Shown piece after piece: positions 9,887-20,985 of a stretch of 64,000 bases of DNA (positions are counted from its first letter, which is position 1; each line of letters opens with the position of its first letter). The stretch lies in the IMG/VR virus record IMGVR_UViG_3300036770_003657, positions 1 through 64,000 of that record. The stretch is one strand, 5' to 3'. The notes below the pieces were generated by a model. That model was given only the letters and a program-made list of their open reading frames with translations. It was not told the origin of the DNA and searched no databases. The position numbers and the translations under genes are program-made.

Positions 9887-9926
9887 CACTTTTTCACACT
9901 TTTTCACACTTTTCTACACCTTTTAG
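9887..9926. repeat. 4 x 10-bp tandem repeat CACTTTTTCA (phased T-tracts)
   Basis: cactttttca cactttttca cacttttcta caccttttag. Confidence 0.85.
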
Positions 9927-10108: not shown

Positions 10109-10423
10109 GTTGTATAAGAACAACAGGTGTTGTGATTTCACTACAGTGTTGTATAAGAGCAACAGGTGTTGTGAAAGAGCCACAGGCGAGTGCGGCGGCG
10201 GTGTGGCGGAAATACAACAGAATCTTGTGGATTTTTCGTTTTCAAATTCCAATATAGATAGTATAATGAACGCCTAGACTGTTGTATTATTACAACAAAT
10301 ACCCCTACAGTTTGACAGGTCTTTAGAGCTGTACTATAATAGAGACATGCTAGTAAAAAACGACACAAAAAAAACGACACAGTCGTGTTGTATACATACG
10401 ACACTGTGTTGTACACTAGCAAC
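10109..10423. repeat. Cluster of 16-bp quasi-palindromes GTTGT-N6-ACAAC
   Basis: Copies at 10109, 10129, 10148, 10168, 10203 (degenerate), 10281, 10387 and 10408. Confidence 0.8.
10298..10340 (+). promoter_or_regulatory. Boxed early promoter 1
   Basis: AATACCC-N7-TTGACA-GGTCTTT...TATAAT, 17-bp spacer. Confidence 0.88.
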
Positions 10424-10429
10424 GACGTT

Positions 10430-10472
10430 AAAGACCCTACAGATTGACAGGTCTTTGGACCCAGTGTATAAT
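10430..10472 (+). promoter_or_regulatory. Boxed early promoter 2
   Basis: AAAGACC-N7-TTGACA-GGTCTTT...TATAAT. Confidence 0.9.
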
Positions 10473-10500
10473 GCTTTTATTGTAAACAAAAGGAGCGAAG

Positions 10501-10797
10501 ATGCAAAATTCATTAAGCGCAGACTATTCAGCAGAATTTGAGCTTATGTACAATGAGAGCATAGAAGTAGACGTAGACGATATTGCACATGAGCTCACTG
10601 TTCGCTTTGAGCAAGAGTTCGCAGACTACTTAAGGGGCTGTGACAGTGAAGACGTAGGTGCTGTTATTATATACAGACGTGGAGGAGAAGAAGTTGCGTT
10701 CTTTGACTATGAGAACATGCACGGTAGCGTCTATGAGCTAGGACACAAAAGAGCCAGCGAGACTAGCATAGAGTGGGCAGAACGTGTGGGACTATAA
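10501..10797 (+). CDS. Acidic early hypothetical protein
   Basis: GGAGCGAAG RBS; stop overlaps the next box. Confidence 0.8.
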   Translation: MQNSLSADYSAEFELMYNESIEVDVDDIAHELTVRFEQEFADYLRGCDSEDVGAVIIYRRGGEEVAFFDYENMHGSVYELGHKRASETSIEWAERVGL

Positions 10798-10838
10798 AGA
10801 CCTGACAACTTGACAGGTCTTTAGAAGGCCTGTATAAT
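10796..10838 (+). promoter_or_regulatory. Boxed early promoter 3
   Basis: AAAGACCTGACAACTTGACAGGTCTTT near-perfect palindrome...TATAAT. Confidence 0.9.
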
Positions 10839-10868
10839 GCTTGTATTGTAAACAAAAGGAGCGAAGAA

Positions 10869-11099
10869 ATGCGTGGACCCAATATGTCATATTGTATGTG
10901 CGAGAACACTCTGCTGGCCTTGCACCAAGTCATAGCAGCAATGAAAGAAGAAGGCCCTATGTTCTTAAACGATCTTAGCCGTAGTGAGCGGGAGAGCTTT
11001 GAAGAGCTGTTTAATGCTTGTGAGACCTTTGTAAACCATGCGGATGAGTTGATTGCGGGTGAGGAGGAGTTGGAACTTAGCCCCTATGAGGACGAATAA
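10869..11099 (+). CDS. Early hypothetical protein
   Basis: GGAGCGAAG RBS; NMSYCMCENT motif; stop in the next box. Confidence 0.8.
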   Translation: MRGPNMSYCMCENTLLALHQVIAAMKEEGPMFLNDLSRSERESFEELFNACETFVNHADELIAGEEELELSPYEDE

Positions 11100-11137
11100 C
11101 CTTATAGGTTGACAGGTCTTTAGAAGGCCTGTATAAT
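11095..11137 (+). promoter_or_regulatory. Boxed early promoter 4
   Basis: AATAACC-N7-TTGACA-GGTCTTT...TATAAT. Confidence 0.9.
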
Positions 11138-11166
11138 ATGGGTATAGTAGATAACAAGGAGCGAAT

Positions 11167-11319
11167 ATGAAGTATGCTTGTTGGAGTGTAGTAGGTGGAT
11201 GGGTCACAGCCCTTGTCAATGGTGAGGGTGAGGTCAATGAGTTCATTGGCCCTGTGTTTAATAGTATAACAGATCTTTGGAAGTGGCAGCGTGCTAACCT
11301 TTACGGGGAGATGGCATAA
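11167..11319 (+). CDS. Early hypothetical protein (50 aa)
   Basis: GGAGCGAAT RBS immediately upstream; not in the ORF track. Confidence 0.7.
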   Translation: MKYACWSVVGGWVTALVNGEGEVNEFIGPVFNSITDLWKWQRANLYGEMA

Positions 11320-11504
11320 TGGTTAGGGTAATCACTAACAGTTTGGGCAGTGGAGATTGGGTCATTGTGCAGGCGGGCTCAGAGACCTTGCACGAAGGAC
11401 ATAGAGTTGCTGCTATTGATCTTGTAATGATCCTACAGAATTTGGGCATACACTCAGAGCTTGTTGAGTGTAAAGACAGCGAAATGGAAGATGGAGCATA
11501 CTAA
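11319..11504 (+). CDS. Early hypothetical protein
   Basis: TAATG coupling, GGAG SD. Confidence 0.7.
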   Translation: MVRVITNSLGSGDWVIVQAGSETLHEGHRVAAIDLVMILQNLGIHSELVECKDSEMEDGAY

Positions 11505-11505
11505 A

Positions 11506-11745
11506 ATGGTATTGGCAGAAGACATTGAAATCCTTAGCACATTCACCGCAGCAGACTTGACTGAGGGTATTAGGCTCAGTGGCTATAAGGGTGATAGGTT
11601 TATAACGGCCAAGTTCTTAGGCATCACTAACAGTGGCCAGTTCTGCTATAGTGTAACTTATAAGGCTCTGGACCAGTGCATAGAGCGCACTAAGGTCTTT
11701 GTAGACGTAGACCCAGAGACGGGTGCAACTAGAGTGGATTATTAA
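11506..11745 (+). CDS. Early hypothetical protein
   Basis: GGAGC SD before ATG 11506; FLGITNSGQFCY. Confidence 0.7.
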   Translation: MVLAEDIEILSTFTAADLTEGIRLSGYKGDRFITAKFLGITNSGQFCYSVTYKALDQCIERTKVFVDVDPETGATRVDY

Positions 11746-11746
11746 G

Positions 11747-11893
11747 ATGGATACAGAACTTGTAGAGTTGATTGAAAAGGTCATAGAGCAGATCAAATGG
11801 GACTTTGAGTTGGGACAGACAGAGGACTTGGAGATCCTACTAGCCCAATGCCCTAAAGAATACTTGAGAGATTACTTGCCCGAAGGAGAGTGA
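11747..11893 (+). CDS. Early hypothetical protein (48 aa)
   Basis: Abuts neighbours; MDTELVELIEKVIEQIKWD... Confidence 0.6.
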   Translation: MDTELVELIEKVIEQIKWDFELGQTEDLEILLAQCPKEYLRDYLPEGE

Positions 11894-11894
11894 T

Positions 11895-12065
11895 ATGGAG
11901 TTCCTACAAAGAGCAGAACGGTATGCTGAGGCCCGTGGAGATGACATGTTTTTTAAATGGGTATACTCAAACCACAGGGAATATAACGATGTCGCCGATT
12001 CGGTGTGGAAGACACTGAGTTATCTTTATGGCAATCAGGTGGCAGACCTGTTGGAATTTCAATAA
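11895..12065 (+). CDS. Early hypothetical protein (56 aa)
   Basis: GGAG SD; abuts the previous stop. Confidence 0.6.
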   Translation: MEFLQRAERYAEARGDDMFFKWVYSNHREYNDVADSVWKTLSYLYGNQVADLLEFQ

Positions 12066-12078
12066 TTAGGAGAGCGAG

Positions 12079-12231
12079 ATGAGTGGAGTCCTACATAGAG
12101 TAGACGTAGTGGTCAGTCTGTGGATTGATGAGGACGCAGACCCTACGTGGGTAGTGCAGGAGATGGACTATGAGTTCCGTCACCCTGACATCAAAGAAAC
12201 AGAAATTAGGGATGTCATCACAGAGTTCTAA
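12079..12231 (+). CDS. Early hypothetical protein (50 aa)
   Basis: AGGAG SD; stop overlaps box 5. Confidence 0.65.
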   Translation: MSGVLHRVDVVVSLWIDEDADPTWVVQEMDYEFRHPDIKETEIRDVITEF

Positions 12232-12272
12232 AGACCACATAGGTTGACAGGTCTTTGGAGCGGTGCTATAAT
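12230..12272 (+). promoter_or_regulatory. Boxed early promoter 5
   Basis: AAAGACC-N7-TTGACA-GGTCTTT...TATAAT. Confidence 0.9.
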
Positions 12273-12301
12273 ATGAACATACTGTTAAACAAGGAGCAAA
12301 G

Positions 12302-12703
12302 ATGGGAACTAGAGCGCTAACTTTTGTATACGATGAGCGGGGCAATGCCGTAGTCAACCTCTATCGCCAGTTTGATGGCTACATAGCGGGACACGGAGCA
12401 GAACTTGCTGAGTTCCTCAATGGGCTCACACTGGTCAATGGCTTTGGTCGTGAGGAAAAGGGCATTGCTAATGGTATGGGCTGTTTGGCTGCTCAAATGA
12501 TTGCTCACTTCAAAGATAGTGTAGGTGGCTTTTATATCCACGCAGTCACAGAAAAGGACTGTGGTCAGGACTATGAATACCATGTATACCGGGACAGAGT
12601 TGAGGTGTTAGGTCCAGGCAGCATATTCAATCCAGGACCCAATGACCTAGTGTTCAAAGGCACTTGGGCTGAGTTCGCAGAGCATTGCAAGGTCTCAGCA
12701 TAA
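12302..12703 (+). CDS. Conserved hypothetical phage protein
   Basis: MGTR...YRQFDGY..GHG.EL...NGMGCLAAQ pattern; GGAGC RBS. Confidence 0.8.
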   Translation: MGTRALTFVYDERGNAVVNLYRQFDGYIAGHGAELAEFLNGLTLVNGFGREEKGIANGMGCLAAQMIAHFKDSVGGFYIHAVTEKDCGQDYEYHVYRDRVEVLGPGSIFNPGPNDLVFKGTWAEFAEHCKVSA

Positions 12704-12867
12704 TGGAGATCTACAGAGATGAAACTGGTAGGTACTATGCTTTTGACCCGCAGACGTGTCAACTATGCGCTCTGGAGTCAACAGGCTACACAGATGCGCA
12801 GGAGGAGGCAGATACTGTTTATGGAACGAAGGACTTTGTCGAACTTGTTGACAACTCGCAAGAGTGA
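12703..12867 (+). CDS. Early hypothetical protein (54 aa)
   Basis: TAATG coupling. Confidence 0.6.
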   Translation: MEIYRDETGRYYAFDPQTCQLCALESTGYTDAQEEADTVYGTKDFVELVDNSQE

Positions 12868-12876
12868 CTATATAAT
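12848..12876 (+). promoter_or_regulatory. Sigma70-type promoter (no inverted box)
   Basis: TTGACA-17-TATAAT upstream of the ATPase. Confidence 0.8.
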
Positions 12877-12906
12877 TAGTGCTTAATTAATACATAGGAG
12901 CGAACT

Positions 12907-13779
12907 ATGCCAAAGATGATCAACGCACAAGAACTTATGACCAAACCCACAACCTCCAGCTTTGAACTAGAGCCCACCCGCAAAGTACTAAACGAGACAG
13001 ATGACGAGATCATTGATCGCTTACGTGAACGCTTTAGTATCTTAGACGACATGACCCGTGCTGTAAAGAAGGGTGATGTACGTGCAATGATTGTTAGTGG
13101 TCCTCCAGGAGTAGGCAAGAGCTATGGAGTAGAGCGAGTGCTGAGTAGACACGATGTGTTCGCCGATGTAGCACAGGATGAAAAGCTTAAGAAGTATGAG
13201 GTAGTCAAAGGTGCTATGAGTGCCATTGGTCTGTACAAGAAATTGTACGAGTTCAGTGCTAAGAAGAACATCCTTGTGTTCGATGACTGCGACAGTGTAT
13301 TGTTGGATGATCTCAGTTTAAATATCCTTAAGGCTGCACTAGATTCTAGCGCCAAACGTACTATTCATTGGAACACGGATAGCCGCAGCCTACAGAATGA
13401 AGGAGTGCCCAACAAGTTTGAGTTCAAAGGTGGTGCCATCTTCATCACCAACATCAAATTTGAAAACGTTAGGTCAAAGAAGTTGCGTGACCACTTAGAA
13501 GCATTGGAGAGTCGTTGCCATTACTTGGATCTCACTATTGACACTGACAGAGAGAAATTATTACGTATTAGGCAAGTCACGCAAGATCACAACCTTTTTG
13601 AAGTAAATGGCTTTGAGTTTAAGGACTATGAGAAAGATGAGGTCATTGACTTCATTGATGAGAACAAGCATAAGATGCGTGAGATGAGCTTGCGTATGGT
13701 AATCAAAGTGGCAAGCTTGAAGGCCTCTATGCCCAACTGGAAGAGAGTAGCAGCCCTAACCTGCATGAAAAGAGTATAA
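12907..13779 (+). CDS. AAA+ / P-loop ATPase
   Basis: Walker A GPPGVGKS, Walker B LVFDDCD, sensor-like IFITN, ALESR. Confidence 0.85.
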   Translation: MPKMINAQELMTKPTTSSFELEPTRKVLNETDDEIIDRLRERFSILDDMTRAVKKGDVRAMIVSGPPGVGKSYGVERVLSRHDVFADVAQDEKLKKYEVVKGAMSAIGLYKKLYEFSAKKNILVFDDCDSVLLDDLSLNILKAALDSSAKRTIHWNTDSRSLQNEGVPNKFEFKGGAIFITNIKFENVRSKKLRDHLEALESRCHYLDLTIDTDREKLLRIRQVTQDHNLFEVNGFEFKDYEKDEVIDFIDENKHKMREMSLRMVIKVASLKASMPNWKRVAALTCMKRV

Positions 13780-13785
13780 TCCCCG

Positions 13786-13846
13786 TAAAAACCTGATTCG
13801 CTCCCAGGTTTTTAGCCCCCCGATTCGCTCCCGGGGGGATTTTTTT
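13786..13846 (+). ncRNA. Twin hairpin with identical ATTCGCTCC loops; candidate anti-SD sRNA; second hairpin doubles as terminator
   Basis: TAAAAACCTG-attcgctcc-CAGGTTTTTA and CCCCCCG-attcgctcc-CGGGGGG then a T-run. Confidence 0.55.
13816..13846 (+). terminator. Intrinsic terminator after the ATPase
   Basis: 7-bp GC stem followed by ATTTTTTT. Confidence 0.8.
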
Positions 13847-13867
13847 GACTGTTGTACGTGTACAACG

Positions 13868-13910
13868 AAAGACCCTACAGGTTGACAGGTCTTTGCTTTG
13901 GAGCTATAAT
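13868..13910 (+). promoter_or_regulatory. Boxed early promoter 6, preceded by GTTGTACGTGTACAAC (13851-13866)
   Basis: AAAGACC-N7-TTGACA-GGTCTTT...TATAAT. Confidence 0.9.
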
Positions 13911-13940
13911 GTGAACATACTGTTAAACAAGGAGCAAAAA

Positions 13941-14195
13941 ATGGGAATGTGGACTACGGAGAATCAGGACACTATGAAAGATGTGCTTAAGGCCTTCAAC
14001 GATGCTGCTTATGCTAACTATGGCAATCACTCTTATGCTGCTGGCTACTTGGAGAGCCTTGTTGTAGAGATGCTGGCTCACTGTCCCAAGCGGTATCAGA
14101 AGAGCTTGATACAGAGCATGATTGGTGTAACGCAACGGCAAGAGAAGGAGGCCATTGCCAAGATGAACAAGGTAGTCAATACCCACATAGGTTGA
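13941..14195 (+). CDS. Early hypothetical protein
   Basis: GGAGC RBS; YAAGYLES motif; stop is the TGA inside the next -35. Confidence 0.75.
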   Translation: MGMWTTENQDTMKDVLKAFNDAAYANYGNHSYAAGYLESLVVEMLAHCPKRYQKSLIQSMIGVTQRQEKEAIAKMNKVVNTHIG

Positions 14196-14220
14196 CAGGT
14201 CTTTGGATCGGTTGTATAAT
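14178..14220 (+). promoter_or_regulatory. Boxed early promoter 7
   Basis: AATACCC-N7-TTGACA-GGTCTTT...TATAAT. Confidence 0.9.
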
Positions 14221-14250
14221 ATGGTTATAGTAAACAACAAGGAGCAGCAA

Positions 14251-14445
14251 ATGGGTTGGATAAAGAATGGAGAGCATGTAAAGGCAGTATACATGGGCCA
14301 ACCCATTGAGGGCCGTGTTGAGGACAGCCGTGTCAAGTATGGTGGACGAGTGCAATATACAGTGGAGTTAACGCAGCCAATCCAATTGCGTTGGAGAACT
14401 GAGCAGACAACCCGTGTGCTCATTGAAGATCGAGATTTAGTATAA
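14251..14445 (+). CDS. Early hypothetical protein (small beta-barrel-like)
   Basis: GGAGC RBS; GRVEDSRVKYGGRVQYTV. Confidence 0.75.
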   Translation: MGWIKNGEHVKAVYMGQPIEGRVEDSRVKYGGRVQYTVELTQPIQLRWRTEQTTRVLIEDRDLV

Positions 14446-14455
14446 GGAGCCTATT

Positions 14456-14653
14456 ATGTGGACCAAACAAGATAGCTATCGTAGCCGTCGTTATACTTGC
14501 GAACTCTTAAGCCTTGTGGAAGACGACATGATCGACAAGGACACGTTGATTAGGGACTTATTAGGCTATTTGAGTGAGAGTGAAGTAGCGGACTTTGTTC
14601 GTAAGAATGACTTAATGCCCTGGCTCTACAATGAGGACAATGAAGATGAGTAG
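14456..14653 (+). CDS. Early hypothetical protein
   Basis: AAGGAGC RBS. Confidence 0.7.
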   Translation: MWTKQDSYRSRRYTCELLSLVEDDMIDKDTLIRDLLGYLSESEVADFVRKNDLMPWLYNEDNEDE

Positions 14654-14819
14654 AATGAGTGACTTAGATATAGAAATGCAGGAGATGTTAGAGCGTGGAG
14701 TAGGTATAGATGATGTTGCTGCCTACTTCAATGTACCCGTTGAGTGGGTATGGCAAGCTCATGCCAATCTTCTACAGAGCTTGGCTGACCTGTGGTTTGA
14801 CAACGTAGAAACTAACTAA
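14646..14819 (+). CDS. Small hypothetical protein, possible HTH
   Basis: MLERGVGIDDVAAYFNVPVEWV resembles an HTH. Confidence 0.55.
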   Translation: MSRMSDLDIEMQEMLERGVGIDDVAAYFNVPVEWVWQAHANLLQSLADLWFDNVETN

Positions 14820-14828
14820 GGAATAGAT

Positions 14829-15356
14829 ATGCCTAATTGGTGCTCAAACAAATTAACTCTCAGACACAAGCAGCCAGACCGATTGGAAGCGGCCATAGAT
14901 GCCTTCAAGGAGGGTAAGTTCTTAGAACACTTTGTTGCCTTACCCAATGGTCAATGGAACTATGACTTCTGTGTCTCCAACTGGGGAACTAAGTGGGATG
15001 TCAGTGGAGATGACAGAGATGTGGTGGTAGAACCAGATTCAGTGATCTTCTACTTTGACAGTGCGTGGAGTCCACCCTCTGAAGCATACAGAGCAATGGC
15101 AGCACAAGGCTTTGAAGTAGAGGCCCTGTACAATGAGCCAGGCATGTGCTTTGTAGGCAAGATCATAGCCGATGAGGATGGCTTTGACGATCTCTACTAC
15201 GAATATGGTAGTGAGGATTCAAACACGGTGAGACTCCTCATTGGAGAAGAACTTGATGACTACTATGGCATCAGCGAGTTTATGGAACAGATGGAAGTGG
15301 AAAGACTAGAGAACGAATTAGACGAGATCATCAACGAGGAGAATAAAGATGAGTAA
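14829..15356 (+). CDS. DUF1281/YubB-like ferredoxin-fold protein
   Basis: MPNWCSNKL...WYxxCxxNWGTKWD-like segment...FDSAWSPP...YxEPGMxF signature. Confidence 0.75.
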   Translation: MPNWCSNKLTLRHKQPDRLEAAIDAFKEGKFLEHFVALPNGQWNYDFCVSNWGTKWDVSGDDRDVVVEPDSVIFYFDSAWSPPSEAYRAMAAQGFEVEALYNEPGMCFVGKIIADEDGFDDLYYEYGSEDSNTVRLLIGEELDDYYGISEFMEQMEVERLENELDEIINEENKDE

Positions 15357-15516
15357 GGTCTTTGATTTTGTAGTGGAAGCAGCTCTACGTAGGGCTCCTG
15401 TGTGCAAGGTCTGTGAGCTGCCCACGAGTGCGGCTGTTGTAAATGGACAACGGTTGACGGCCAAACAATTGGCAAAATTCAACAAGGCAAGGCTTGACAA
15501 GGCAACGAAACGGTAG
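15349..15516 (+). CDS. Hypothetical protein (55 aa)
   Basis: GAGGAG SD; overlaps the previous stop. Confidence 0.5.
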   Translation: MSKVFDFVVEAALRRAPVCKVCELPTSAAVVNGQRLTAKQLAKFNKARLDKATKR

Positions 15517-15522
15517 TATTAT
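15494..15522 (+). promoter_or_regulatory. Sigma70-type promoter (no box)
   Basis: TTGACA-17-TATTAT. Confidence 0.7.
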
Positions 15523-15574
15523 ACGATTATGCACTAATGCATATCAACTCTGTTAAATACGAAAGGCAAATATT

Positions 15575-15958
15575 ATGGCAACTGAAAAATTATTCACTGT
15601 AGCAGGCATCAGCAAGCTTCCTTCAACCCACGGCAGCGAGTACAAGGTACGCTTTGCCAATGACGTCATGCGTGTCAAAGTCCTACTCAAAGGTGGACAC
15701 GAAGATGTGCGTCTTGTAGAACTTGATGCTCCTAGTACTAAGATGGAGGCTGTACAAATCCTCAAAGGTATGGATGAGTTTAGCGATGTCATCGCACAGG
15801 CTACCCTCAATGACTTCATTGAGGAGAATACTCCAAAGGCACCTCGTGAGAAGGCAGTTAAGGCACCTAAGATCAAGCCTGAGTCAACTCCTACTGCCAC
15901 TAAGGCACCTAAGGCCAAGATTGAGATGCCCACTGACATGGAGGATGCTCCCTTCTAA
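15575..15958 (+). CDS. Conserved phage protein with K/A/P-rich tail (possible DNA-binding)
   Basis: KVRFAND..RVKVL.KGGH motif; KAP repeats. Confidence 0.7.
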   Translation: MATEKLFTVAGISKLPSTHGSEYKVRFANDVMRVKVLLKGGHEDVRLVELDAPSTKMEAVQILKGMDEFSDVIAQATLNDFIEENTPKAPREKAVKAPKIKPESTPTATKAPKAKIEMPTDMEDAPF

Positions 15959-16148
15959 TGAGCTGGGAATTGTACGAAGTAATGGCCACAGATGATCGTG
16001 GCCATGAGTCACTCTACTATGCTACAAAGAGCTTGAAAGAGGCTAAGGCTATGGCCCAACAGGCTCTACGTGAAGGTATGGTGAGTTGCGTAGTGAATAG
16101 AGAGACTGAAGACGGAGACAGTGAGTGCGTCTTCGAGTGTAAATCATA

Positions 16149-16149
<1 letters not shown>
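15958..16149 (+). CDS. Hypothetical protein
   Basis: TAATG coupling; ends at the tRNA 5' end. Confidence 0.65.
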
Positions 16150-16227
<78 letters not shown>

Positions 16228-16243
16228 ACTACAAAGGTAACAT

Positions 16244-16522
16244 ATGGCAAGTAAACTGGACAAGTATCTTAGACCCACAGTGATCTTTGATGTACAGAAT
16301 CCTGAACATAGACAACACTATTTCAACTTCCTAGACACTAGAACTTGGAGTGCCTGTCCCTATCAGTTCATCACAGGCAATAGAGATGACAGCCCAATCT
16401 TGACTGTGGCCATAGAGCATCAATTGCTCAAATATTACAGGGACGCTGACAGAGCCTTGGCCAAGAAGGGTCACAATCTCATAGAAGTGGCCATGCGTGT
16501 GGTGGATGAGGAGCATGTCTAG
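16244..16522 (+). CDS. Hypothetical phage protein
   Basis: RPxVxFDxxNxEHR...WxxCPYQF pattern; AAGG SD. Confidence 0.75.
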   Translation: MASKLDKYLRPTVIFDVQNPEHRQHYFNFLDTRTWSACPYQFITGNRDDSPILTVAIEHQLLKYYRDADRALAKKGHNLIEVAMRVVDEEHV

Positions 16523-16542
16523 ACTGTTGTTTACGTACAACA

Positions 16543-16585
16543 AATACCCACACAAGTTGACAGGACTTTAGAGCTCGCGTATAAT
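16543..16585 (+). promoter_or_regulatory. Boxed early promoter 8, preceded by GTTGTTTACGTACAAC (16526-16541)
   Basis: AATACCC-N7-TTGACA-GGACTTT...TATAAT. Confidence 0.88.
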
Positions 16586-16618
16586 TGCTTTATTAGTTAA
16601 ACAACACAGGGCAATTAA

Positions 16619-16792
16619 ATGCAAAAAGTATATAATTTGTTTTTTTATAACGACAGCAACGAGCGTGAGCACTGGGGTACATACGGCACAAAAGTGGCTG
16701 CTGAGCGGGCCATTGTAGAGACGCAAGAGGAGTTTGGCAGTGACATTTTTGCAACAGAACAGTTTAGCATAGAGACTAGCACAGTAGCATAA
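16619..16792 (+). CDS. Early hypothetical protein (57 aa)
   Basis: Exactly fills the space between boxes 8 and 9. Confidence 0.7.
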   Translation: MQKVYNLFFYNDSNEREHWGTYGTKVAAERAIVETQEEFGSDIFATEQFSIETSTVA

Positions 16793-16833
16793 TACCCACA
16801 GAGGTTGACAGGTCTTTAGAAGGCCTGTATAAT
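16791..16833 (+). promoter_or_regulatory. Boxed early promoter 9
   Basis: AATACCC-N7-TTGACA-GGTCTTTAGAAGGCCTG-TATAAT; spacer identical to boxes 3 and 4. Confidence 0.9.
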
Positions 16834-16862
16834 GCTTGTATAGTAAACAAAAGGAGCGAAAA

Positions 16863-17066
16863 ATGGGATTTGAAAAGCGTGTTATAGAAGTGGTCAGAAC
16901 TGTTACAGACGCAGAAGCACATTTCTATGAGGGTTCACTGTTCCTGCATACAGCAGACAGAGACATAGCAGTGCTGGTCTACAATGCCCTGCGTAAAAGG
17001 GTAACAGGCAGGCTGGCATTTGGTCCTGCAGGCGAATTTGAAACTGTATACGATTTTTTAGCATAA
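16863..17066 (+). CDS. Early hypothetical protein
   Basis: GGAGCGAAA RBS. Confidence 0.75.
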   Translation: MGFEKRVIEVVRTVTDAEAHFYEGSLFLHTADRDIAVLVYNALRKRVTGRLAFGPAGEFETVYDFLA

Positions 17067-17075
17067 GGACTAGAC

Positions 17076-17396
17076 ATGTTAAAATTACATAAGGTAGAAC
17101 AGTTAGAGGATATGATTACTATACGCTTTGACTGTGACTTTTTTGTAACAATGGCTGGAGACGGCTTGTGGGGCTGTGAGGCTGGACGCAAGGTGCGAGT
17201 GTTCACCATAGATGTTAACATAAGAGACAATATGCGAGTTGAGGTCAATGTGGGACACGACAGCAATTGGGATATCTATACTGATACGGCTTTTGAGCGA
17301 GCAATCAGTGATAGGTTAGGCATCCCAGTAGGCTTTACAGAACAGGGTATGCAGGACGACGAGATGGCTAGTATGGAGGCTAAGGTATGCGTATAG
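17076..17396 (+). CDS. Early hypothetical protein
   Basis: GDGLW...IYTD..FE...FTEQGMQ pattern; AAGGA SD. Confidence 0.75.
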   Translation: MLKLHKVEQLEDMITIRFDCDFFVTMAGDGLWGCEAGRKVRVFTIDVNIRDNMRVEVNVGHDSNWDIYTDTAFERAISDRLGIPVGFTEQGMQDDEMASMEAKVCV

Positions 17397-17623
17397 TACA
17401 TGACTATGGACTGGTTAGGGTTGTGAGCTTGGGAGACCCATTTGCTAACACCTACGATATCCGTTGTGAAGTTTATGACGAGGCAGCAGACATTTGGAGG
17501 CTATGGCATGGCTTTAACAGCCTAAGCGATGACTATGCCTACACCAATGCTCGTGAGGCTGCTGGTCGTGCTATAAAGGAGTTGGCCCGACTAAAGGCAG
17601 AGGCACTCGTAGGCGCTAAATAA
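17387..17623 (+). CDS. Early hypothetical protein
   Basis: GGAGG SD; FNSLSDDYAYTNAR. Confidence 0.7.
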   Translation: MRIVHDYGLVRVVSLGDPFANTYDIRCEVYDEAADIWRLWHGFNSLSDDYAYTNAREAAGRAIKELARLKAEALVGAK

Positions 17624-17630
17624 CATCCAA

Positions 17631-17715
17631 GCTCCAATGGCGTAATAGGTAGCCGCACGGGACTTAAAATCCCGGGTCGAGAGGCGTCCCGGTTCGAGTC
17701 CGGGTTGGAGCACCA
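17631..17715 (+). tRNA. tRNA-Leu(TAA)
   Basis: GCTCCAA/TTGGAGC acceptor stem, CGGGA-CTTAAAA-TCCCG arm, long variable arm, CCA. Confidence 0.93.
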
Positions 17716-17718
17716 AAT

Positions 17719-17793
17719 ACCACCGTCGTTCAACGGATAGGACAGGAGTCTTCTAAACTCTAAATGGGGGTTCGATTCCCTCCGGTGGTGCCA
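17719..17793 (+). tRNA. tRNA-Arg(TCT)
   Basis: ACCACCG/CGGTGGT acceptor stem, GGAGT-CTTCTAA-ACTCT arm, GGTTCGA, CCA. Confidence 0.92.
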
Positions 17794-17811
17794 TACAACA
17801 AAGGACAAGAC

Positions 17812-18051
17812 ATGGGTTGGGTTGTATACACAGAACAACATGGACAGATCATCAGGTACTATAAGACATCTGGACCAGCCAAGAGGTTGGTGAACCAGCA
17901 CAATAGACTGGTGGACCAGCGTGGTTTCAGCTGGTCCAAGGGTAAGGTGGCCTGCTGCCCTTTCCCACAGTTCGAAGGTGTGCTCTTGGGCCTACGAGGA
18001 GAAGAACTAAAGATGTGGCAATTTTTCAACAGTAAGGGAATACCCACATAG
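17812..18051 (+). CDS. Early hypothetical protein
   Basis: AAGGA SD; stop inside box 10. Confidence 0.7.
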   Translation: MGWVVYTEQHGQIIRYYKTSGPAKRLVNQHNRLVDQRGFSWSKGKVACCPFPQFEGVLLGLRGEELKMWQFFNSKGIPT

Positions 18052-18081
18052 GTTGACAGGTCTTTGCTTTGATACTATAAT
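18039..18081 (+). promoter_or_regulatory. Boxed early promoter 10
   Basis: AATACCC-N7-TTGACA-GGTCTTT...TATAAT. Confidence 0.9.
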
Positions 18082-18111
18082 ATCTCTATAGTAAACAACA
18101 AGGAGCAGCAA

Positions 18112-18303
18112 ATGGGCTACAAGGTACTAGGCAAGTTTGAAGATGTTATGCAAGGCTTTGGCCCACGCAAAGGTCTAGAAGGTCCCTTCAACTTTAACGG
18201 CCGTGTGTTGTATTACGACAACAAGGAAGGCAAGTACTACGACCCACGTACTGACTTCTATGTCAGTTACGATGAGTGGTTCCAATTAGCAGGTCTTAAG
18301 TAA
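18112..18303 (+). CDS. Conserved small phage protein
   Basis: GLEGPF...GRVLYYDxKEGxYYDPxTDFY; GGAGC RBS. Confidence 0.8.
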   Translation: MGYKVLGKFEDVMQGFGPRKGLEGPFNFNGRVLYYDNKEGKYYDPRTDFYVSYDEWFQLAGLK

Positions 18304-18313
18304 GGAGATTGAC

Positions 18314-18487
18314 ATGATTGAGCGTAATCTAAATGCAGCGGGTCGGAGAGCCAATGTGCTGTTCGGCTTTGTTGAGGTGGTAGACGGCTTGGTCAGAGTA
18401 TTGAGCTTGGGCTTCCTCCACACCCGCCTGTGCCTAATCGTTACCCGTTGGCAAGTCCGTCGGGCTTTCCAAAACCGTAGAGGTTGA
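18314..18487 (+). CDS. Early hypothetical protein (57 aa)
   Basis: AAGGAG SD; stop is the TGA of the next -35. Confidence 0.6.
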   Translation: MIERNLNAAGRRANVLFGFVEVVDGLVRVLSLGFLHTRLCLIVTRWQVRRAFQNRRG

Positions 18488-18512
18488 CACTAGCACCGAA
18501 AGGTGCTATACT
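18470..18512 (+). promoter_or_regulatory. Variant early promoter with spacer hairpin
   Basis: TTGACA-17-TATACT; TAGCACC-GAAA-GGTGCTA replaces the right half-box; leader shared with box 11. Confidence 0.8.
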
Positions 18513-18542
18513 ATGGTTACAGTGAACAACAAGGAGCGGCAA

Positions 18543-18713
18543 ATGGATCAAGCAATCTACGTTATAGAAGGTGTTGGTGAGTACGGCTTGGACCTGGATC
18601 ACAGCCCAGGAGTTGGCGGCTACTATGTCAAACTCTACGATGGATCCTACGATGCCAGTGGCTTTGACACTGAACGAGAAGCACGAGAAGAACTGGAGTA
18701 CCTAACCCAATGA
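18543..18713 (+). CDS. Early hypothetical protein
   Basis: GGAGCG RBS. Confidence 0.7.
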   Translation: MDQAIYVIEGVGEYGLDLDHSPGVGGYYVKLYDGSYDASGFDTEREAREELEYLTQ

Positions 18714-18880
18714 ACACCGAGGAGCAGGAGATCTCTTACTATGTGGTCATAGAGCACGAGGGCGAAACTGCTCGCTTAGAGTGTGCTAGCCTTGAAGAAG
18801 CACAGCGGGTAAGGCAAAGTTTTGTCAACTGGGGTGGCTACCAATCTGTTGAGATTCTCAGCAAAGACCCTACAGGTTGA
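18710..18880 (+). CDS. Early hypothetical protein (56 aa)
   Basis: GGAG SD, ATGA overlap; stop is the TGA of the next -35. Confidence 0.65.
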   Translation: MNTEEQEISYYVVIEHEGETARLECASLEEAQRVRQSFVNWGGYQSVEILSKDPTG

Positions 18881-18905
18881 CAGGGTATTCAAACGGTGCT
18901 ATACT
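18863..18905 (+). promoter_or_regulatory. Boxed early promoter 11
   Basis: AAAGACC-N7-TTGACA-GGGTATT...TATACT. Confidence 0.9.
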
Positions 18906-18935
18906 ATGGTTACAGTGAACAACAAGGAGCAAGAA

Positions 18936-19160
18936 ATGAACGAAAGAATCCGAGAACTTGCTGAACAGGCTGAATGGCGATTTGCCGACCGAGCAACAGG
19001 TAATTTTTCCGAATATGATCAACGATTAGAAAAGTTCGCCGAGTTGATTGTACGGAATTGTATTGTAGACTTTTACAGAAATTACCTAGATACCACTAGT
19101 GATGAAGATATCACCAAGCAGGTTGATAGATATGTAAAACAACAATTTGGAGTTGAATAA
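18936..19160 (+). CDS. Small phage protein, 'EKFAELIV' paralog family, in cassette form
   Basis: MNERIRELAEQA...EKFAELIVRNC...QFGVE. Confidence 0.8.
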   Translation: MNERIRELAEQAEWRFADRATGNFSEYDQRLEKFAELIVRNCIVDFYRNYLDTTSDEDITKQVDRYVKQQFGVE

Positions 19161-19198
19161 CCCTACAGGTTGACAGGTCTTTGGAACGGCACTATAAT
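19156..19198 (+). promoter_or_regulatory. Boxed early promoter 12
   Basis: AATAACC-N7-TTGACA-GGTCTTT...TATAAT. Confidence 0.9.
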
Positions 19199-19227
19199 AG
19201 ACACATAGTAAACAAAAGGAGCGATAG

Positions 19228-19344
19228 ATGAGCAAGTTGGATAGAGTGTTAGATGAACTGTTTTGGTTGGCTCTTTTTGCCATCCCCCCAGTGTTCGTTG
19301 TAACCTGTGTGAGTGGTATTGTTTACGGCCTGTTGTTTAGGTAA
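19228..19344 (+). CDS. 38-aa single-TM micro-protein
   Basis: GGAGCGAT RBS; fills the cassette between boxes 12 and 13. Confidence 0.7.
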   Translation: MSKLDRVLDELFWLALFAIPPVFVVTCVSGIVYGLLFR

Positions 19345-19385
19345 TACCCACATAGGTTGACAGGTCTTTGGAACGGTTGTATAAT
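19343..19385 (+). promoter_or_regulatory. Boxed early promoter 13
   Basis: AATACCC-N7-TTGACA-GGTCTTT...TATAAT. Confidence 0.9.
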
Positions 19386-19472
19386 ATGGTTATAGTAAGC
19401 AAGCAGGGGCGAACAGACAAATTGCTTAGGCAGATGACCCCTGTGGACTTACCCAACATTTAGGAGCAACAA

Positions 19473-19772
19473 ATGGCCAAACTTATGATCCAGACCCAAG
19501 TACTTGAAAACTACGGCACTGAGTTCCGTCCACGCTGGAAAGCCAAAGGAGGCGACGACTATGTGGTACCCAACTTCACCCAATTCAATGACATCCACGC
19601 CGCTATCGATAGCATCAGGCAGCAGATTGAGACCGATAACAGTTTCTACCAGGAGTACATCGTTGACTGGTACGTGGCTGAGGACAACGAACTCACTAAG
19701 TGGGAACAACAGCAACTCGATCTCGACGGCAGGATCATCTACCCGGCAAAAGAGCTGGTGGCTGTAGCCTAA
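19473..19772 (+). CDS. Conserved hypothetical phage protein
   Basis: KLMIQTQVLENY...WKAKGG.DY pattern; GGAGC RBS. Confidence 0.8.
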   Translation: MAKLMIQTQVLENYGTEFRPRWKAKGGDDYVVPNFTQFNDIHAAIDSIRQQIETDNSFYQEYIVDWYVAEDNELTKWEQQQLDLDGRIIYPAKELVAVA

Positions 19773-19782
19773 GGAGCAGACA

Positions 19783-19992
19783 ATGATAGAACTACACGGA
19801 TTGACCCGCAAGCAACGAATCCTAGCGGACACTCTTTGGAACAAATGCCAAAGCCAACAGGAAGTTGACTACATTCTCCAAACCTTTGGAGTGGATGCTC
19901 GTATTGTATACGAGATGATGTTGGCCCACAGCATGGACCAATATACACAAACGGATGAGGCTATGATGGTACTAGAGAGGTTTATGCTATGA
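19783..19992 (+). CDS. Early hypothetical protein
   Basis: AAGGAGC RBS. Confidence 0.7.
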   Translation: MIELHGLTRKQRILADTLWNKCQSQQEVDYILQTFGVDARIVYEMMLAHSMDQYTQTDEAMMVLERFML

Positions 19993-20270
19993 GGGTAGAA
20001 GCCATACACGGTGCAGGCTCCAGTGCTAGGGAGGTCATGATGGAGATGTGGAAGATGTCAATGACCCAGAGACTTATGCAGGACATGAAGAACAGGGTAA
20101 ACGGACAAAGCCGCCATCATAGCCAAGACATTATGGTGAACAGTGTGGGATCAGAGAACATCCATAGCCGTCCAGATAAGGACCGTCCACAGCCAGTTGA
20201 GCCTGCTGTGAAGATACATCTTAGTCCACAGGCCCAACTTATGGCCAAGATCAATACCCACACAGATTGA
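19989..20270 (+). CDS. Early hypothetical protein
   Basis: ATGA overlap; stop is the TGA of the next -35. Confidence 0.6.
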   Translation: MRVEAIHGAGSSAREVMMEMWKMSMTQRLMQDMKNRVNGQSRHHSQDIMVNSVGSENIHSRPDKDRPQPVEPAVKIHLSPQAQLMAKINTHTD

Positions 20271-20295
20271 CAGGTCTTTGGAATGAGTGCATAAT
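20253..20295 (+). promoter_or_regulatory. Boxed early promoter 14
   Basis: AATACCC-N7-TTGACA-GGTCTTT...CATAAT. Confidence 0.88.
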
Positions 20296-20325
20296 ACGAA
20301 CATACTAACACAACGGAGCAACAAG

Positions 20326-20541
20326 ATGCAAACCCTACTAGTTCATACCCTTGTACAATTCATCCTCAAGCGTCGTGCAGACTATCCCAGACATTTTAGC
20401 ATCAAACGAAGTGAACTTAACATTGTGGCATATCATAGTTTGGGTGTGGAGAGCCTCCGTTATATGACTGTGAAGAACTTAGAGACTGTGGCTTCAATGG
20501 TCAATGGTACTTACGAAAAGGCTCGTATAGAGTTCAACTAA
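20326..20541 (+). CDS. Early hypothetical protein
   Basis: GGAGC RBS; stop overlaps box 15. Confidence 0.7.
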   Translation: MQTLLVHTLVQFILKRRADYPRHFSIKRSELNIVAYHSLGVESLRYMTVKNLETVASMVNGTYEKARIEFN

Positions 20542-20582
20542 TACCCACACAGATTGACAGGTCTTTGGAACGAGTGCATAAT
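20540..20582 (+). promoter_or_regulatory. Boxed early promoter 15
   Basis: 50/51-nt identical to box 14 and its first leader bases. Confidence 0.88.
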
Positions 20583-20588
20583 ACGAAC

Positions 20589-20915: not shown

Positions 20916-20956
20916 TAACCCTACAGGTTGACAGGGTATTGGAACACTGCTATACT
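20914..20956 (+). promoter_or_regulatory. Boxed early promoter 16
   Basis: AATAACC-N7-TTGACA-GGGTATT...TATACT. Confidence 0.9.
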
Positions 20957-20985
20957 GTTAACACTTAAACACAACGGAGCAACAA

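What the first reader, a model, noticed from the sequence alone, without database searches (positions are those of the whole stretch)
10109..10423. Second palindrome family (GTTGT-N6-ACAAC): iteron-like cluster, also fused to selected promoters
Seen: 16-bp quasi-palindromes at 10109, 10129, 10148 and 10168 (19-20-bp period, about two helical turns), 10203, 10281, 10387 and 10408. Single copies lie 1 bp upstream of boxed promoters at 10281, 13851 and 16526, each preceded by GACT, and one is inside the nuclease gene at 20871. Inference: binding sites for a second dimeric protein; the cluster could be a replication origin, a packaging/terminus or injection-stop signal, or a parS-like nucleation site that also gates a subset of promoters.
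Basis: partly seen in the sequence, partly recalled or inferred. Interest (0 to 1): 0.65.

Follow-up and report, generated by a model that had tools for sequence, protein, structure and literature searches.

The report
Operator-like palindromes at jumbo-phage early promoters
A 16-bp palindrome (GTTGT-N6-ACAAC) occurs only in the early-gene block of an uncultivated 400-kb phage, mostly just upstream of its strong early promoters; it is most likely the docking site of an unidentified regulator protein, not a proven replication origin.

Summary
The window is the first 64 kb of a 399,796-bp IMG/VR jumbo-phage record from the T4 superfamily. GTTGT-N6-ACAAC occurs 7 times in the whole genome, or 9 times as GTTGY-N6-RCAAC. 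All copies lie between 10,109 and 20,886, where about 0.02 are expected. This is the same 11-kb block that holds 16 near-identical sigma-70 "boxed" promoters.

Three exact copies sit exactly 15 nt upstream of a -35 hexamer. In five aligned copies the arms are invariant and the spacer is free. Across 23 related loci plus the window, 17 of 27 exact copies lie 0-60 nt upstream of a strong promoter, against 4.5% of positions. One copy downstream of a conserved AAA ATPase gene is kept in about 17 of 24 relatives.

Best reading: operators for a dimeric, probably phage-encoded regulator of early promoters. The 10.1-10.4 kb cluster would be a cooperative control region bracketing the first two promoters.

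The origin, parS and terminus readings gained no support. There is no skew inflection and no ParB. The nearest relative has a different repeat array at the same place. Termini could not be tested because only contigs were available.

No binding protein was identified. This is a new member of a known kind and of moderate interest.

The parts
10109..10183 (.). Tandem array of four dyad sites, starting at 10109 (exact), 10129 (1 mismatch), 10148 (GCAAC variant) and 10168 (2 mismatches). The period is 19-20 bp. It is a 39-bp two-site unit duplicated.
10211..10220 (.). Lone right half-site AATACAACAG. It is preceded by the GAGTGCGGC motif that accompanies dyads elsewhere.
10281..10296 (.). Exact dyad, preceded by GACT, 15 nt upstream of the -35 of promoter P1. 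Its centre is near -58.
10312..10340 (+). Boxed promoter P1 (TTGACA-17-TATAAT, 12 of 12).
10387..10423 (.). Two degenerate dyads (10387 with 1 mismatch, 10408 the GCAAC variant) between P1 and P2. They lie in the remnant of a deleted small GIY-YIG gene that is intact at this place in L002.
10444..10472 (+). Boxed promoter P2, which drives the first early gene (10501-10797).
13851..13866 (.). Exact dyad after the two terminators of the AAA ATPase gene (12907-13779) and 15 nt upstream of the promoter at 13882-13910. A dyad at this post-ATPase place is kept in about 17 of 24 related loci.
15436..15451 (.). Exact dyad inside ORF 15349-15516, preceded by GAGTGCGGC. Orthologues in L001 and L002 carry a G in place of the first A of the right arm (GCAAC), through a synonymous change.
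16526..16541 (.). Exact dyad 3 nt after the stop codon of ORF 16244-16522, preceded by GACT, and 15 nt upstream of the promoter at 16557-16585.
18207..18222 (.). Exact dyad inside ORF 18112-18303. No promoter lies within 60 nt.
20871..20886 (.). Exact dyad in the 3' end of the GIY-YIG-like gene 20589-20915, where it encodes VVREQQ. It lies 41 nt upstream of the promoter at 20928-20956. The same arrangement is found in L002 at 4072.
10304..20960 (+). Early-gene block: 16 near-identical boxed sigma-70 promoters found nowhere else in the genome, about 35 small ORFs with strong Shine-Dalgarno sites, and 3 tRNA genes. The dyads are confined to this block and its 0.8-kb leader.
9887..9924 (.). Phased T-tract repeat (CACTTTTTCA, 3.8 copies, 10-bp period) in the leader. 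In L001, L002 and L023 the same repeat sits upstream of paired dyads, after the ATPase gene.

Best explanation
The GTTGT-N6-ACAAC dyads are operator-type DNA sites for a sequence-specific homodimeric protein, most probably encoded by the phage. This protein would modulate a subset of the host-sigma-70 early promoters. I think the effect is to shut them down or insulate them, because every promoter that carries a dyad already has consensus -35 and -10 hexamers and needs no activator.

The 10.1-10.4 kb cluster is the control region at the head of the early block. A duplicated four-site array, with sites about two helical turns apart, would load the protein cooperatively. Further sites bracket the first two promoters: one at about -58 of P1, and two between P1 and P2. 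Single sites 15-41 nt upstream of three later promoters put those under the same control.

Shown here: the enrichment, the confinement to the early block, the conservation of the arms against a free spacer, the fixed spacing, the link to promoters, and the conservation in relatives.

Inferred: that a protein dimer binds, that it is phage-encoded, and the direction of its effect.
For: - All 7 exact copies (9 with the Y/R variant) in 400 kb lie in the 11-kb early block, where 0.02 are expected.
- The copies at 10281, 13851 and 16526 are each exactly 15 nt from TTGACA.
- In the alignment of these three with the L001 and L023 orthologues, GACTGTTGT and CAAC are invariant while the spacer positions vary.
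- In the window plus 23 related loci, 17 of 27 exact and 16 of 49 one-mismatch dyads lie 0-60 nt upstream of a TTGAC-N-TATAAT-type promoter on the same strand. Only 4.5% of positions qualify (P = 6e-17 and 2e-10).
- The dyad recurs in unrelated flanks in relatives with 65-74% ATPase identity: after tRNA genes, after stop codons, and abutting a -35.
- Paired dyads 21 bp apart sit upstream of one promoter in L001, L002 and L023.
- A dyad 70-340 bp downstream of the ATPase gene is kept across the family and is invariant in 7 aligned distant relatives.
- Variants seen in lake-water strains fall in the spacers of the array (10119, 10173, 10174).
- Five betaproteobacterial genomes from the taxa nearest to the phage hemF hold only 0-2 copies each, fewer than the control pattern. 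This argues against a host regulon.
Against: - No binding protein was found. About 30 early ORFs have no DNA-binding Pfam, PHROG or NCBIfam match.
- The genome gives no hit over the cut-off for HTH_3, ParB_N, Crp, HU or GntR.
- The one LuxR/GerE protein lies 320 kb away and is absent from the 96%-complete relative G001.
- The sites lie upstream of the core promoter (centres about -43 to -85) and not in one helical phase, which is unusual for a simple repressor.
- Three exact copies are inside ORFs. The orthologue of 15436 has its right arm changed by a synonymous substitution in relatives.
- G001 has only 4 copies against 3 for the control pattern. G002-G004, which are partial records, have none.
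- Part of the copy number reflects duplicated promoter cassettes.
Confidence: 0.5

Rival explanations
1. Replication origin. The four-site array would be a set of iterons for an initiator. The flanking moderately AT-rich stretch and promoter P1 would supply unwinding and priming. The dispersed copies would be secondary or regulatory sites.
For: - The array has four evenly spaced sites about two helical turns apart.
- A 70% AT stretch at 10211-10280 and a strong promoter lie next to it.
- The array sits in a 0.8-kb non-coding leader near a local strand switch (minus-strand hemB, plus-strand early genes). T4 origins tend to lie at such switches, and T4 oriE carries evenly spaced repeats (PMC3016281).
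- The relative L020 has five DnaA boxes in a comparable leader.
- L002 has a different array at the same place, as expected if initiator and site co-vary.
Against: - No skew inflection: the extremes are at 389 and 192 kb.
- The array is a recent 39-bp duplication and is absent from L002.
- No initiator-like gene is adjacent. The conserved AAA ATPase is only weakly RFC-like.
- No DnaA boxes lie near the array.
- 70% AT is barely above the genome mean of 63%.
- Most copies sit at promoters spread over 11 kb, which iterons do not do.
Confidence: 0.14
2. Boundary signal of a long terminal repeat. The early block would be a T5- or SPO1-style terminal redundancy. Dyads near its edges would serve terminase cutting or a pause in injection.
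For: - The early block resembles the host-takeover modules that lie in the terminal repeats of T5 and SPO1 (own knowledge).
- The array lies at the left edge of the block. In distant relatives the best-conserved dyad lies at the right edge, just before a T4-type late promoter.
- In the probable source run, exact unitigs have depth 16.5 at 8500-8619 but 34-50 at 10427-12296.
Against: - The depth figures come from unitigs that co-occurring strains can share. They range over 2.1-3.1x rather than a clean 2x.
- IMG/VR finds no terminal repeat.
- The contig ends lie in a 95-bp paralogous repeat, not at this place.
- The window has no dyad at the right edge.
- The relative G001 breaks inside an early gene, not at a boundary.
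- Most dyads are internal to the block.
Confidence: 0.08
3. Sites for a host DNA-binding protein, acting either as a regulatory input to early promoters or as a decoy array that titrates the host factor.
For: - The related phage L020 places host DnaA boxes in a comparable leader.
- No phage binder was found.
- The 5-N6-5 or 6-N4-6 geometry fits many bacterial HTH dimers (own knowledge).
Against: - Five candidate-host-clade genomes have 0-2 copies, below the reversed control pattern.
- The host is unknown: hemF identity to bacteria is only about 60%.
- I know of no bacterial consensus that matches in both sequence and spacing. This comparison was made from memory only.
Confidence: 0.08
4. An RNA-level element: a short hairpin in read-through transcripts that acts as a processing or stability signal, or as the operator of an RNA-binding protein.
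For: - The copies fold into 5-8-bp hairpins of -4 to -9.6 kcal/mol.
- Several lie directly after stop codons or tRNA 3' ends.
Against: - The arms never covary; the same stem sequence is kept everywhere.
- No T-run follows the hairpins.
- The copy at 13851 lies behind two intrinsic terminators, so it would seldom be transcribed.
- The four-site array is not downstream of any strong promoter.
Confidence: 0.07
5. No function of its own. The copies would be passengers in duplicated promoter cassettes or gene remnants, plus coding coincidences (VVxxQ peptides).
For: - Three cassette lineages share flanks: TAGACT-dyad-promoter, GAGTGCGGC-dyad, and the GIY-YIG 3' end.
- The copies at 15436 and 20871 encode VVxxQ.
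- The 10387-10423 copies lie in a gene remnant.
Against: - The spacer diverges while the arms stay invariant inside otherwise 77%-identical cassettes.
- Three unrelated flanks converge on one dyad.
- Distant relatives keep the dyad in further contexts.
- The chance expectation is 0.02.
Confidence: 0.05
6. A parS-like centromere bound by a ParB/KorB-type protein that spreads from its site and also silences promoters.
For: The sites are 16-bp palindromes dispersed at promoters, as with IncP KorB sites or the N15 sop sites. The 13851 copy loosely resembles chromosomal parS in its TGTT...ACGT...AACA pattern. Both points rest on my own knowledge.
Against: - No ParB_N match in six-frame translation of the whole genome, not even a candidate.
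- The PHROG 'partition protein' hit belongs to an HSP70/DnaK homologue.
- The phage has a T4-type lytic gene set.
Confidence: 0.02

Closest known systems
[quoted passage not shown]
   Same: A phage-encoded dimer recognises imperfect inverted repeats that lie upstream of strong host-RNAP early promoters. Several sites of graded quality are clustered in one control region. Arms separated by a non-specific spacer are what is read.
   Different: The p4 site is CTTTTT-N15-AAAATG, there are only four sites, and the binder is known. Here the dyad is 5-N6-5, there are 9 or more sites spread over 11 kb of a 400-kb myovirus, and no binder is known. No p4 homologue was looked for by structure.
Multi-copy operator sets of temperate phages: phiC31 conserved inverted repeats, P1 C1 operators, L5 stoperators (own knowledge, not checked here)
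   Same: One short motif is repeated many times, is confined to early or intergenic regions, often lies next to promoters or gene ends, and serves a single regulator.
   Different: Those phages are temperate and have an identified immunity repressor. This genome has a T4-type lytic gene set, and no repressor-like gene was found.
Iteron arrays of origins: lambda ori with O protein, P1 oriR, and the evenly spaced 12-nt repeats at T4 oriE (PMC3016281)
   Same: The sites are evenly spaced about two helical turns apart, lie in a non-coding region near a strand switch, and belong to a member of the T4 superfamily.
   Different: The T4 repeats are direct 12-mers whose function is itself unproven. Here the units are dyads, most copies are at promoters, the array is a recent duplication not shared by the nearest relative, and there is no adjacent initiator gene and no skew signal.
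IncP KorB operators and the dispersed centromere sites of phage N15 (own knowledge)
   Same: Palindromes lie at variable distances from many promoters and give global control.
   Different: The defining ParB-family protein is absent.
Host-takeover early modules in the terminal repeats of T5 and SPO1, including the T5 injection-stop region (own knowledge)
   Same: An 11-kb block of many small genes, each with a very strong promoter and ribosome-binding site, with repeat-rich non-coding DNA at its edge. DnaA boxes occur in a relative.
   Different: No terminal repeat or physical end has been shown here, and the dyad sequence is unrelated.
EBNA1, LANA and E2 sites of herpes- and papillomaviruses (own knowledge for the biology; for the fold lead)
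   Same: Dimer-bound palindromes are used both in arrays about 21 bp apart and singly at promoters. The most conserved early protein (20986-21321) has the EBNA1 DNA-binding domain as its only full-length structural match.
   Different: The match is weak (Z 5.3, rmsd 4.4 over 91 residues; Foldseek E about 1) and within the range that the tool calls a common arrangement. The protein is not notably basic, and nothing links it to the dyad.

Membership tests
Transcription-factor operator set (dimeric regulator) | A dyad-symmetric site of fixed geometry, with conserved arms and a free spacer | tested here: met
   GACTGTTGT and CAAC are invariant and the spacer is variable in 5 aligned copies. The same holds in 7 distant relatives.
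Transcription-factor operator set (dimeric regulator) | A non-random position relative to promoters | tested here: met
   17 of 27 exact copies lie 0-60 nt upstream of a promoter against 4.5% of positions. Three copies are at exactly 15 nt. However, the sites lie upstream of the core promoter, not over it.
Transcription-factor operator set (dimeric regulator) | A cognate DNA-binding regulator encoded by the phage or the host | tested here: inconclusive
   No hit among about 30 early ORFs. Only one LuxR/GerE protein was found in the genome, and it is absent from G001. Two conserved early proteins were modelled, and neither gave a clear DNA-binding fold.
Origin iterons | A tandem array of initiator sites at helical-repeat spacing | tested here: met
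   Four sites with a period of 19-20 bp.
Origin iterons | An adjacent initiator gene, a DNA-unwinding element and DnaA boxes | tested here: not met
   No initiator-like ORF is nearby. AT content is 70% against a genome mean of 63%. No DnaA box lies within 8-23 kb.
Origin iterons | A compositional-skew inflection at the site | tested here: not met
   The cumulative-skew minimum is at 389 kb and the maximum at 192 kb. In T4-type phages skew follows transcription, so this is a weak test.
Origin iterons | The array is conserved in close relatives | tested here: not met
   L002 has an unrelated AT-rich array at the same place. Strains about 92% identical do keep the array.
ParB-parS / KorB | A ParB N-terminal domain protein encoded by the element | tested here: not met
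   No candidate at all in the six-frame search. The control genomes were positive.
Packaging or terminus signal, or T5-type injection stop | Coincidence with a physical DNA end or a terminal-repeat boundary | not testable with these tools
   All runs are kept as contigs, and no molecule starts or ends are reported. There is only an ambiguous 2-3x depth step.
Intrinsic terminator or structured RNA | A stem kept by covariation, followed by a T-run | tested here: not met
   The arms are invariant with no compensatory changes, and no T-run follows. The hairpins are weak, at -4 to -9.6 kcal/mol. No Rfam hit other than tRNAs.

The most novel reading that the evidence does not exclude
The dyads could be the cis sites of an E2/EBNA1-like system in a bacteriophage. 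A small early protein with a dimeric alpha/beta DNA-binding fold would bind them. The candidate is the 20986-21321 family, which is present in 23 of 24 related loci and usually lies next to the AAA ATPase gene. This protein would use an array to fire or mark an origin and single sites to tune early promoters, coupling replication start to early-gene shut-off.
Probability: 0.06. Interest if true: 0.8.

Novelty: new member of a known kind. Interest (0 to 1): 0.4.

Why it matters
How huge uncultivated phages time their early, host-RNAP-dependent genes is almost unknown. T4-type phages are thought to switch off early promoters by modifying RNA polymerase, not by operators. This is a conserved DNA dyad tied to a subset of early promoters across a freshwater and subsurface jumbo-phage clade, so it is a concrete handle. 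The promoters are consensus sigma-70 and should work in E. coli reporters, and the site can be used as bait to fish out the regulator from about 35 early ORFs of unknown function. If the binder proves to be a new fold, or if the array is an origin, the value rises. If it is an ordinary repressor, the result is a useful annotation and nothing more.

Tried and rejected
- Near-identical phage records: none found.
- Rfam on 1-24 kb: only three tRNAs.
- Conserved 100-nt leader block 9925-10040 folded on both strands: z = -0.5 and -0.6, so no sign of structure.
- DnaA boxes in the window: not enriched, and none near the cluster.
- Pfam, PHROGs and NCBIfam on about 40 ORFs in and around the early block: no DNA-binding family.
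- Whole-genome family searches: HTH_3 only sub-threshold; ParB_N none; Sigma70_r4 hit turned out to be the LuxR/GerE protein; Crp none; HU none; GntR only sub-threshold.
- LuxR/GerE protein as binder: plausible geometry, but it is absent from G001-G005, and there is no dyad near its own gene.
- Protein 15575-15958 (basic tail, SSB-like tip): modelled, but no PDB match by Foldseek or VIA (best Z 3.2), and no ESM Atlas hit.
- Protein 20986-21321: confident model, but only a weak EBNA1/LANA resemblance.
- AAA ATPase as an initiator: only weakly RFC-like, with no DNA-binding domain seen.
- Host-regulon test in five betaproteobacterial genomes: no enrichment.
- Literature word search for the motif: nothing relevant.
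- Read-terminus analysis: not possible, because the runs are kept as contigs only.
- The big protein searches were not used. The open question is which protein binds the DNA, and those searches would not settle it.

Full report
**What the window is.** The window is the first 64 kb of a single-contig IMG/VR virus record of 399,796 bp. Its GC content is 36.6% and it carries 27 tRNA genes. IMG/VR classes it as linear, and CheckV estimates it as 100% complete. Its family-B DNA polymerase is closest to three groups of jumbo phages: Sinorhizobium phage Phosso (51%), Agrobacterium phage Atu_ph07 (47%) and the Rak2-like coliphages (43%). It is therefore an uncultivated jumbo myovirus of the T4 superfamily. 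The probable source is a subsurface metagenome, and relatives occur in lake and freshwater runs.

**The early block.** Between 10.3 and 21.4 kb lies a block that is richer in GC (about 45%) and coded on the plus strand. It holds about 35 small ORFs with strong Shine-Dalgarno sites, three tRNA genes, and 16 near-identical sigma-70 promoters with a conserved upstream box. These boxed promoters occur nowhere else in the genome. Minus-strand hemB and hemF genes flank the block. A leader of about 0.8 kb without convincing ORFs precedes it.

**Observation check.** GTTGT-N6-ACAAC occurs 7 times in the window, where 0.11 are expected. These 7 are the only copies in the whole genome, and all lie within 10,109-20,886. 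Composition-matched simulations of the block give 0.0245 copies. It is the most frequent perfect 5-Nx-5 dyad in the block.
- If the inner base pair is allowed to vary (GTTGY-N6-RCAAC), there are 9 copies, again all in the block. The reversed control pattern has one.
- Twelve of the 28 genome hits with at most one mismatch lie in the block.
The copies at 10129, 10148, 10387 and 10408 have one mismatch, and those at 10168 and 10203 have two. The copy at 10203 is only a good half-site.
- The array at 10109-10183 has a period of 19-20 bp. It is a 39-bp two-site unit duplicated at 96% identity.

**Anatomy of the sites.** Flank comparison gives three kinds of cassette.
- Type A (10281, 13851, 16526): GACT, then the dyad, then exactly 15 nt, then TTGACA. 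This puts the dyad centre near -58. When these three are aligned with the orthologues of 10281 in L001 and L023, GACTGTTGT and CAAC are invariant while the spacer positions vary. The surrounding cassette has 77% mean column identity.
- Type B: the motif GAGTGCGGC followed by one or two dyads 21 bp apart, placed 42 and 21 nt from a -35. This occurs at window 15436 (inside ORF 15349-15516) and 10188-10220 (degenerate). It also occurs in L001, L002 and L023.
- Type C: the dyad lies in the 3' end of a 108-aa GIY-YIG-like gene and is 41 nt from the next promoter. This occurs at window 20871 and L002 4072.

The two degenerate copies at 10387 and 10408 lie in what remains of a second copy of that GIY-YIG-like gene. 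The gene is intact between the same two promoters in L002. As a result, P1 (10312) has a dyad at about -58 and two more downstream of its start site, and the four-site array lies 130-200 bp upstream.

**Relatives.** I fetched 24 IMG/VR loci through the conserved AAA ATPase gene at 12907-13779; their ATPase identity to the window is 59-88%.
- Exact dyads occur in 15 of the 24 loci (20 copies in 371 kb; 18 after dropping L011, which repeats L010), often in contexts unrelated to the window's: after tRNA genes, after stop codons, and abutting a -35.
- Over the window's first 24 kb plus 23 loci, 17 of 27 exact copies and 16 of 49 one-mismatch copies end 0-60 nt upstream of a strong same-strand promoter. 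Only 4.5% of positions do so (P = 6e-17 and 2e-10).
- The preferred distances are 15-16, 20-21 and 41-42 nt, but distances of 0, 10, 34, 45 and 54 nt also occur. There is therefore no single helical phase.
- A dyad 70-340 bp downstream of the ATPase gene is present in about 17 of the 24 loci. It is invariant in seven aligned distant relatives.
- Turnover is also evident. Partial records G002-G004 have no exact copy. The 96%-complete G001 has four copies against three for the control pattern. The L001 and L002 orthologues of 15436 have a synonymous change that alters the right arm.

- Origin: the cumulative GC-skew extremes are at about 389 and 192 kb. At 9-10 kb there is only the dip caused by the minus-strand hemB gene.
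- Origin: no DnaA box lies between 8 and 23 kb.
- Origin: the stretch next to the array is 70% AT, against a genome mean of 63%.
- Origin: no initiator-like gene is adjacent.
- Origin: where the window has the array, L002 has an unrelated AT-rich repeat array.
- Two points still keep the origin idea alive. L020 has five DnaA boxes in a comparable leader. T4 oriE carries evenly spaced repeats near a strand switch, although their function is unproven (PMC3016281).
- parS: the six-frame search found no ParB_N candidate at all.
- Terminus or injection stop: all runs are stored as contigs, so molecule ends cannot be seen.
- One hint for a terminal repeat: exact unitigs of the probable source run have depth 16.5 just upstream of the block and 34-50 inside it. 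Strains that share the early block would produce the same pattern.
- The contig's own ends lie in a 95-bp paralogous repeat.
- Host factor: five betaproteobacterial genomes, from the taxa nearest to the phage hemF (about 60% identity), carry 0-2 copies each. This is below the reversed control pattern.
- RNA hairpin: the stems are weak, at -4 to -9.6 kcal/mol. They never covary and lack a T-run. The copy at 13851 lies behind two terminators.

**Search for the binder.**
- About 40 ORFs gave no DNA-binding family.
- Whole-genome searches found only one classical HTH regulator above its cut-off. It is a 254-aa LuxR/GerE protein near 330 kb. Regulators of this family commonly bind 16-20-bp dyads (own knowledge). 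However, it is absent from G001-G005, and there is no dyad at its own gene.
- I modelled two widely conserved early proteins.
- The 15575-15958 family has a basic tail and an acidic C-terminal tip that resembles the SSB tip. Its domain has no recognisable fold.
- The 20986-21321 family gave a confident model (pLDDT 94). Its only full-length structural match is the EBNA1 DNA-binding domain (Z 5.3, 91 residues, rmsd 4.4). LANA and EBNA1 chains also appear in the Foldseek list at E about 1. By the tool's own calibration this is a lead, not a finding.

**Mechanism I commit to (confidence 0.5).** The dyads are operators for a dimeric regulator, most probably phage-encoded, that acts on a subset of early promoters.
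- The effect is probably negative. Candidates are shut-off, insulation from upstream read-through, or holding RNA polymerase at the promoter. I favour a negative effect because all the dyad-bearing promoters have consensus hexamers.
- The cluster is a cooperative control region bracketing P1 and P2.
- Shown: the enrichment, the confinement to the block, arms conserved against a free spacer, the fixed spacing, the link to promoters, and conservation across the family.
- Inferred: that a protein binds, the origin of that protein, and the sign of the effect.
- Against: no binder was found. The sites lie upstream of the core promoter, which is unusual for a simple repressor. Some copies are inside genes, and some owe their number to cassette duplication.

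**Comparison and novelty.**
- In function, the nearest parallel is phi29 p4. It is a phage-encoded dimer that binds inverted repeats clustered around strong early promoters (PMC3100819, PMC1904284).
- In distribution, the dyads resemble the multi-copy operator sets of phiC31, P1 and L5, or the KorB sites of IncP plasmids (own knowledge). The proteins that define those systems were not found here.
- The array by itself resembles iterons, but it fails most origin criteria that could be tested.
- I rate this a new member of a known kind, of moderate interest. It gives an experimentally tractable handle on early-gene control in uncultivated jumbo phages.
- The most novel reading still open is an E2/EBNA1-like protein-and-site system that couples origin function to early transcription (about 6%).

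**Limits.** No host, no transcript data and no raw reads were available. Relatives are mostly partial contigs. Comparisons with known binding-site consensus sequences were made from memory.

Noticed in passing
window 7980-8981 (-) and 21812-22684 (-): Two haem/tetrapyrrole biosynthesis genes flank the early block on the opposite strand: hemB (ALAD, Pfam E = 1e-123) and hemF (coproporphyrinogen III oxidase, E = 8e-123). hemF is 55-63% identical to betaproteobacterial genes (Undibacterium, Thiobacillus, Methylophilus). This is a weak hint about the host.
   Followed up: partly
window 15575-15958 (+); homologues in 17 of 24 loci: A conserved early protein with three parts: an 85-aa domain of no recognisable fold, a Lys/Ala/Pro-rich tail, and an acidic C-terminus (EDAPF or ENIPF). 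The C-terminus resembles the protein-docking tip of bacterial SSB, so it may be an SSB-tip mimic.
   Followed up: partly
window 20986-21321 (+); homologues in 23 of 24 loci: The most conserved small early protein. In distant relatives its gene lies directly upstream of the AAA ATPase gene. The model is confident (pLDDT 94). Its only full-length structural match is the EBNA1 DNA-binding domain, and the match is weak (Z 5.3).
   Followed up: partly
G000 329993-330757 (+) (locus L026 913-1677): A 254-aa protein with a C-terminal LuxR/GerE HTH domain (Pfam E = 1e-16) and an unassigned N-terminal 195 aa. It is the only classical HTH regulator found in the genome. It is not present in five related records.
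   Followed up: partly
L020 826-936: Five DnaA boxes within 110 bp, including two in tandem, about 130 bp upstream of a strong early promoter in a related phage. The window has none at the comparable place.
   Followed up: partly
L002 3531-3640: At the place where the window has the dyad array, the closest relative has a different tandem array that is AT-rich (unit roughly TGTTATAGGTTATAT, period 24-31 bp). Arrays with different sequences thus occupy one position in related phages.
   Followed up: partly
window 9887-9924; L001 2653-2692, L002 11095-11134, L023 2451-2490: A phased T-tract repeat (10-bp period, 3-4 copies), which probably bends the DNA. It lies in the window's leader, but in the close relatives it lies after the ATPase gene, upstream of paired dyads. 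The control-region modules are mosaic.
   Followed up: partly
window 9925-10025; L002 3372-3468: A non-coding block about 83% identical between the window and L002, also present in lake-water strains. There is no Rfam hit and no significant fold on either strand. Its function is unknown.
   Followed up: partly
L006-L019 beside the post-ATPase dyad (alignment A5); window about 9790-9810 and about 21450: An 18-nt element, CATAGGTGCCAAATCACC, is invariant in seven distant relatives, between variable flanks that pair as a terminator-like stem. Diverged versions occur at both edges of the window's early block.
   Followed up: no
window 13790-13846: Two tandem intrinsic terminators after the ATPase gene share the same loop sequence, ATTCGCTC. 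The same loop recurs in L002 and L010.
   Followed up: no
window 8500-12300 in run X1: Exact-match unitigs of the probable source run have depth 16.5 upstream of the early block and 34-50 inside it. Either the block is present at a higher copy number (a terminal repeat) or co-occurring strains share it.
   Followed up: partly
G000 about 105-200 and about 399,660-399,760: The two ends of the contig share a repeat of about 95 bp inside small paralogous genes. This probably caused the assembly to break there, so the contig ends are not physical ends.
   Followed up: no
G000 52843-67248, 103124-123172, 128515-146517, 354502-366831: Four giant ORFs of 4801, 6682, 6000 and 4109 aa. The genome also encodes a DnaK-type HSP70 (341772-343649) and a Lon-like ATP-dependent protease (225187-227451).
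   Followed up: no
window 20589-20915 and 10347-10430; L002 3787-4116: A small GIY-YIG-like gene with a leaderless or near-leaderless start directly behind a boxed promoter. It is intact at 20.6 kb, reduced to a remnant at 10.35 kb in the window, and intact at the latter place in L002. This is the pattern expected of a mobile nuclease gene.
   Followed up: partly
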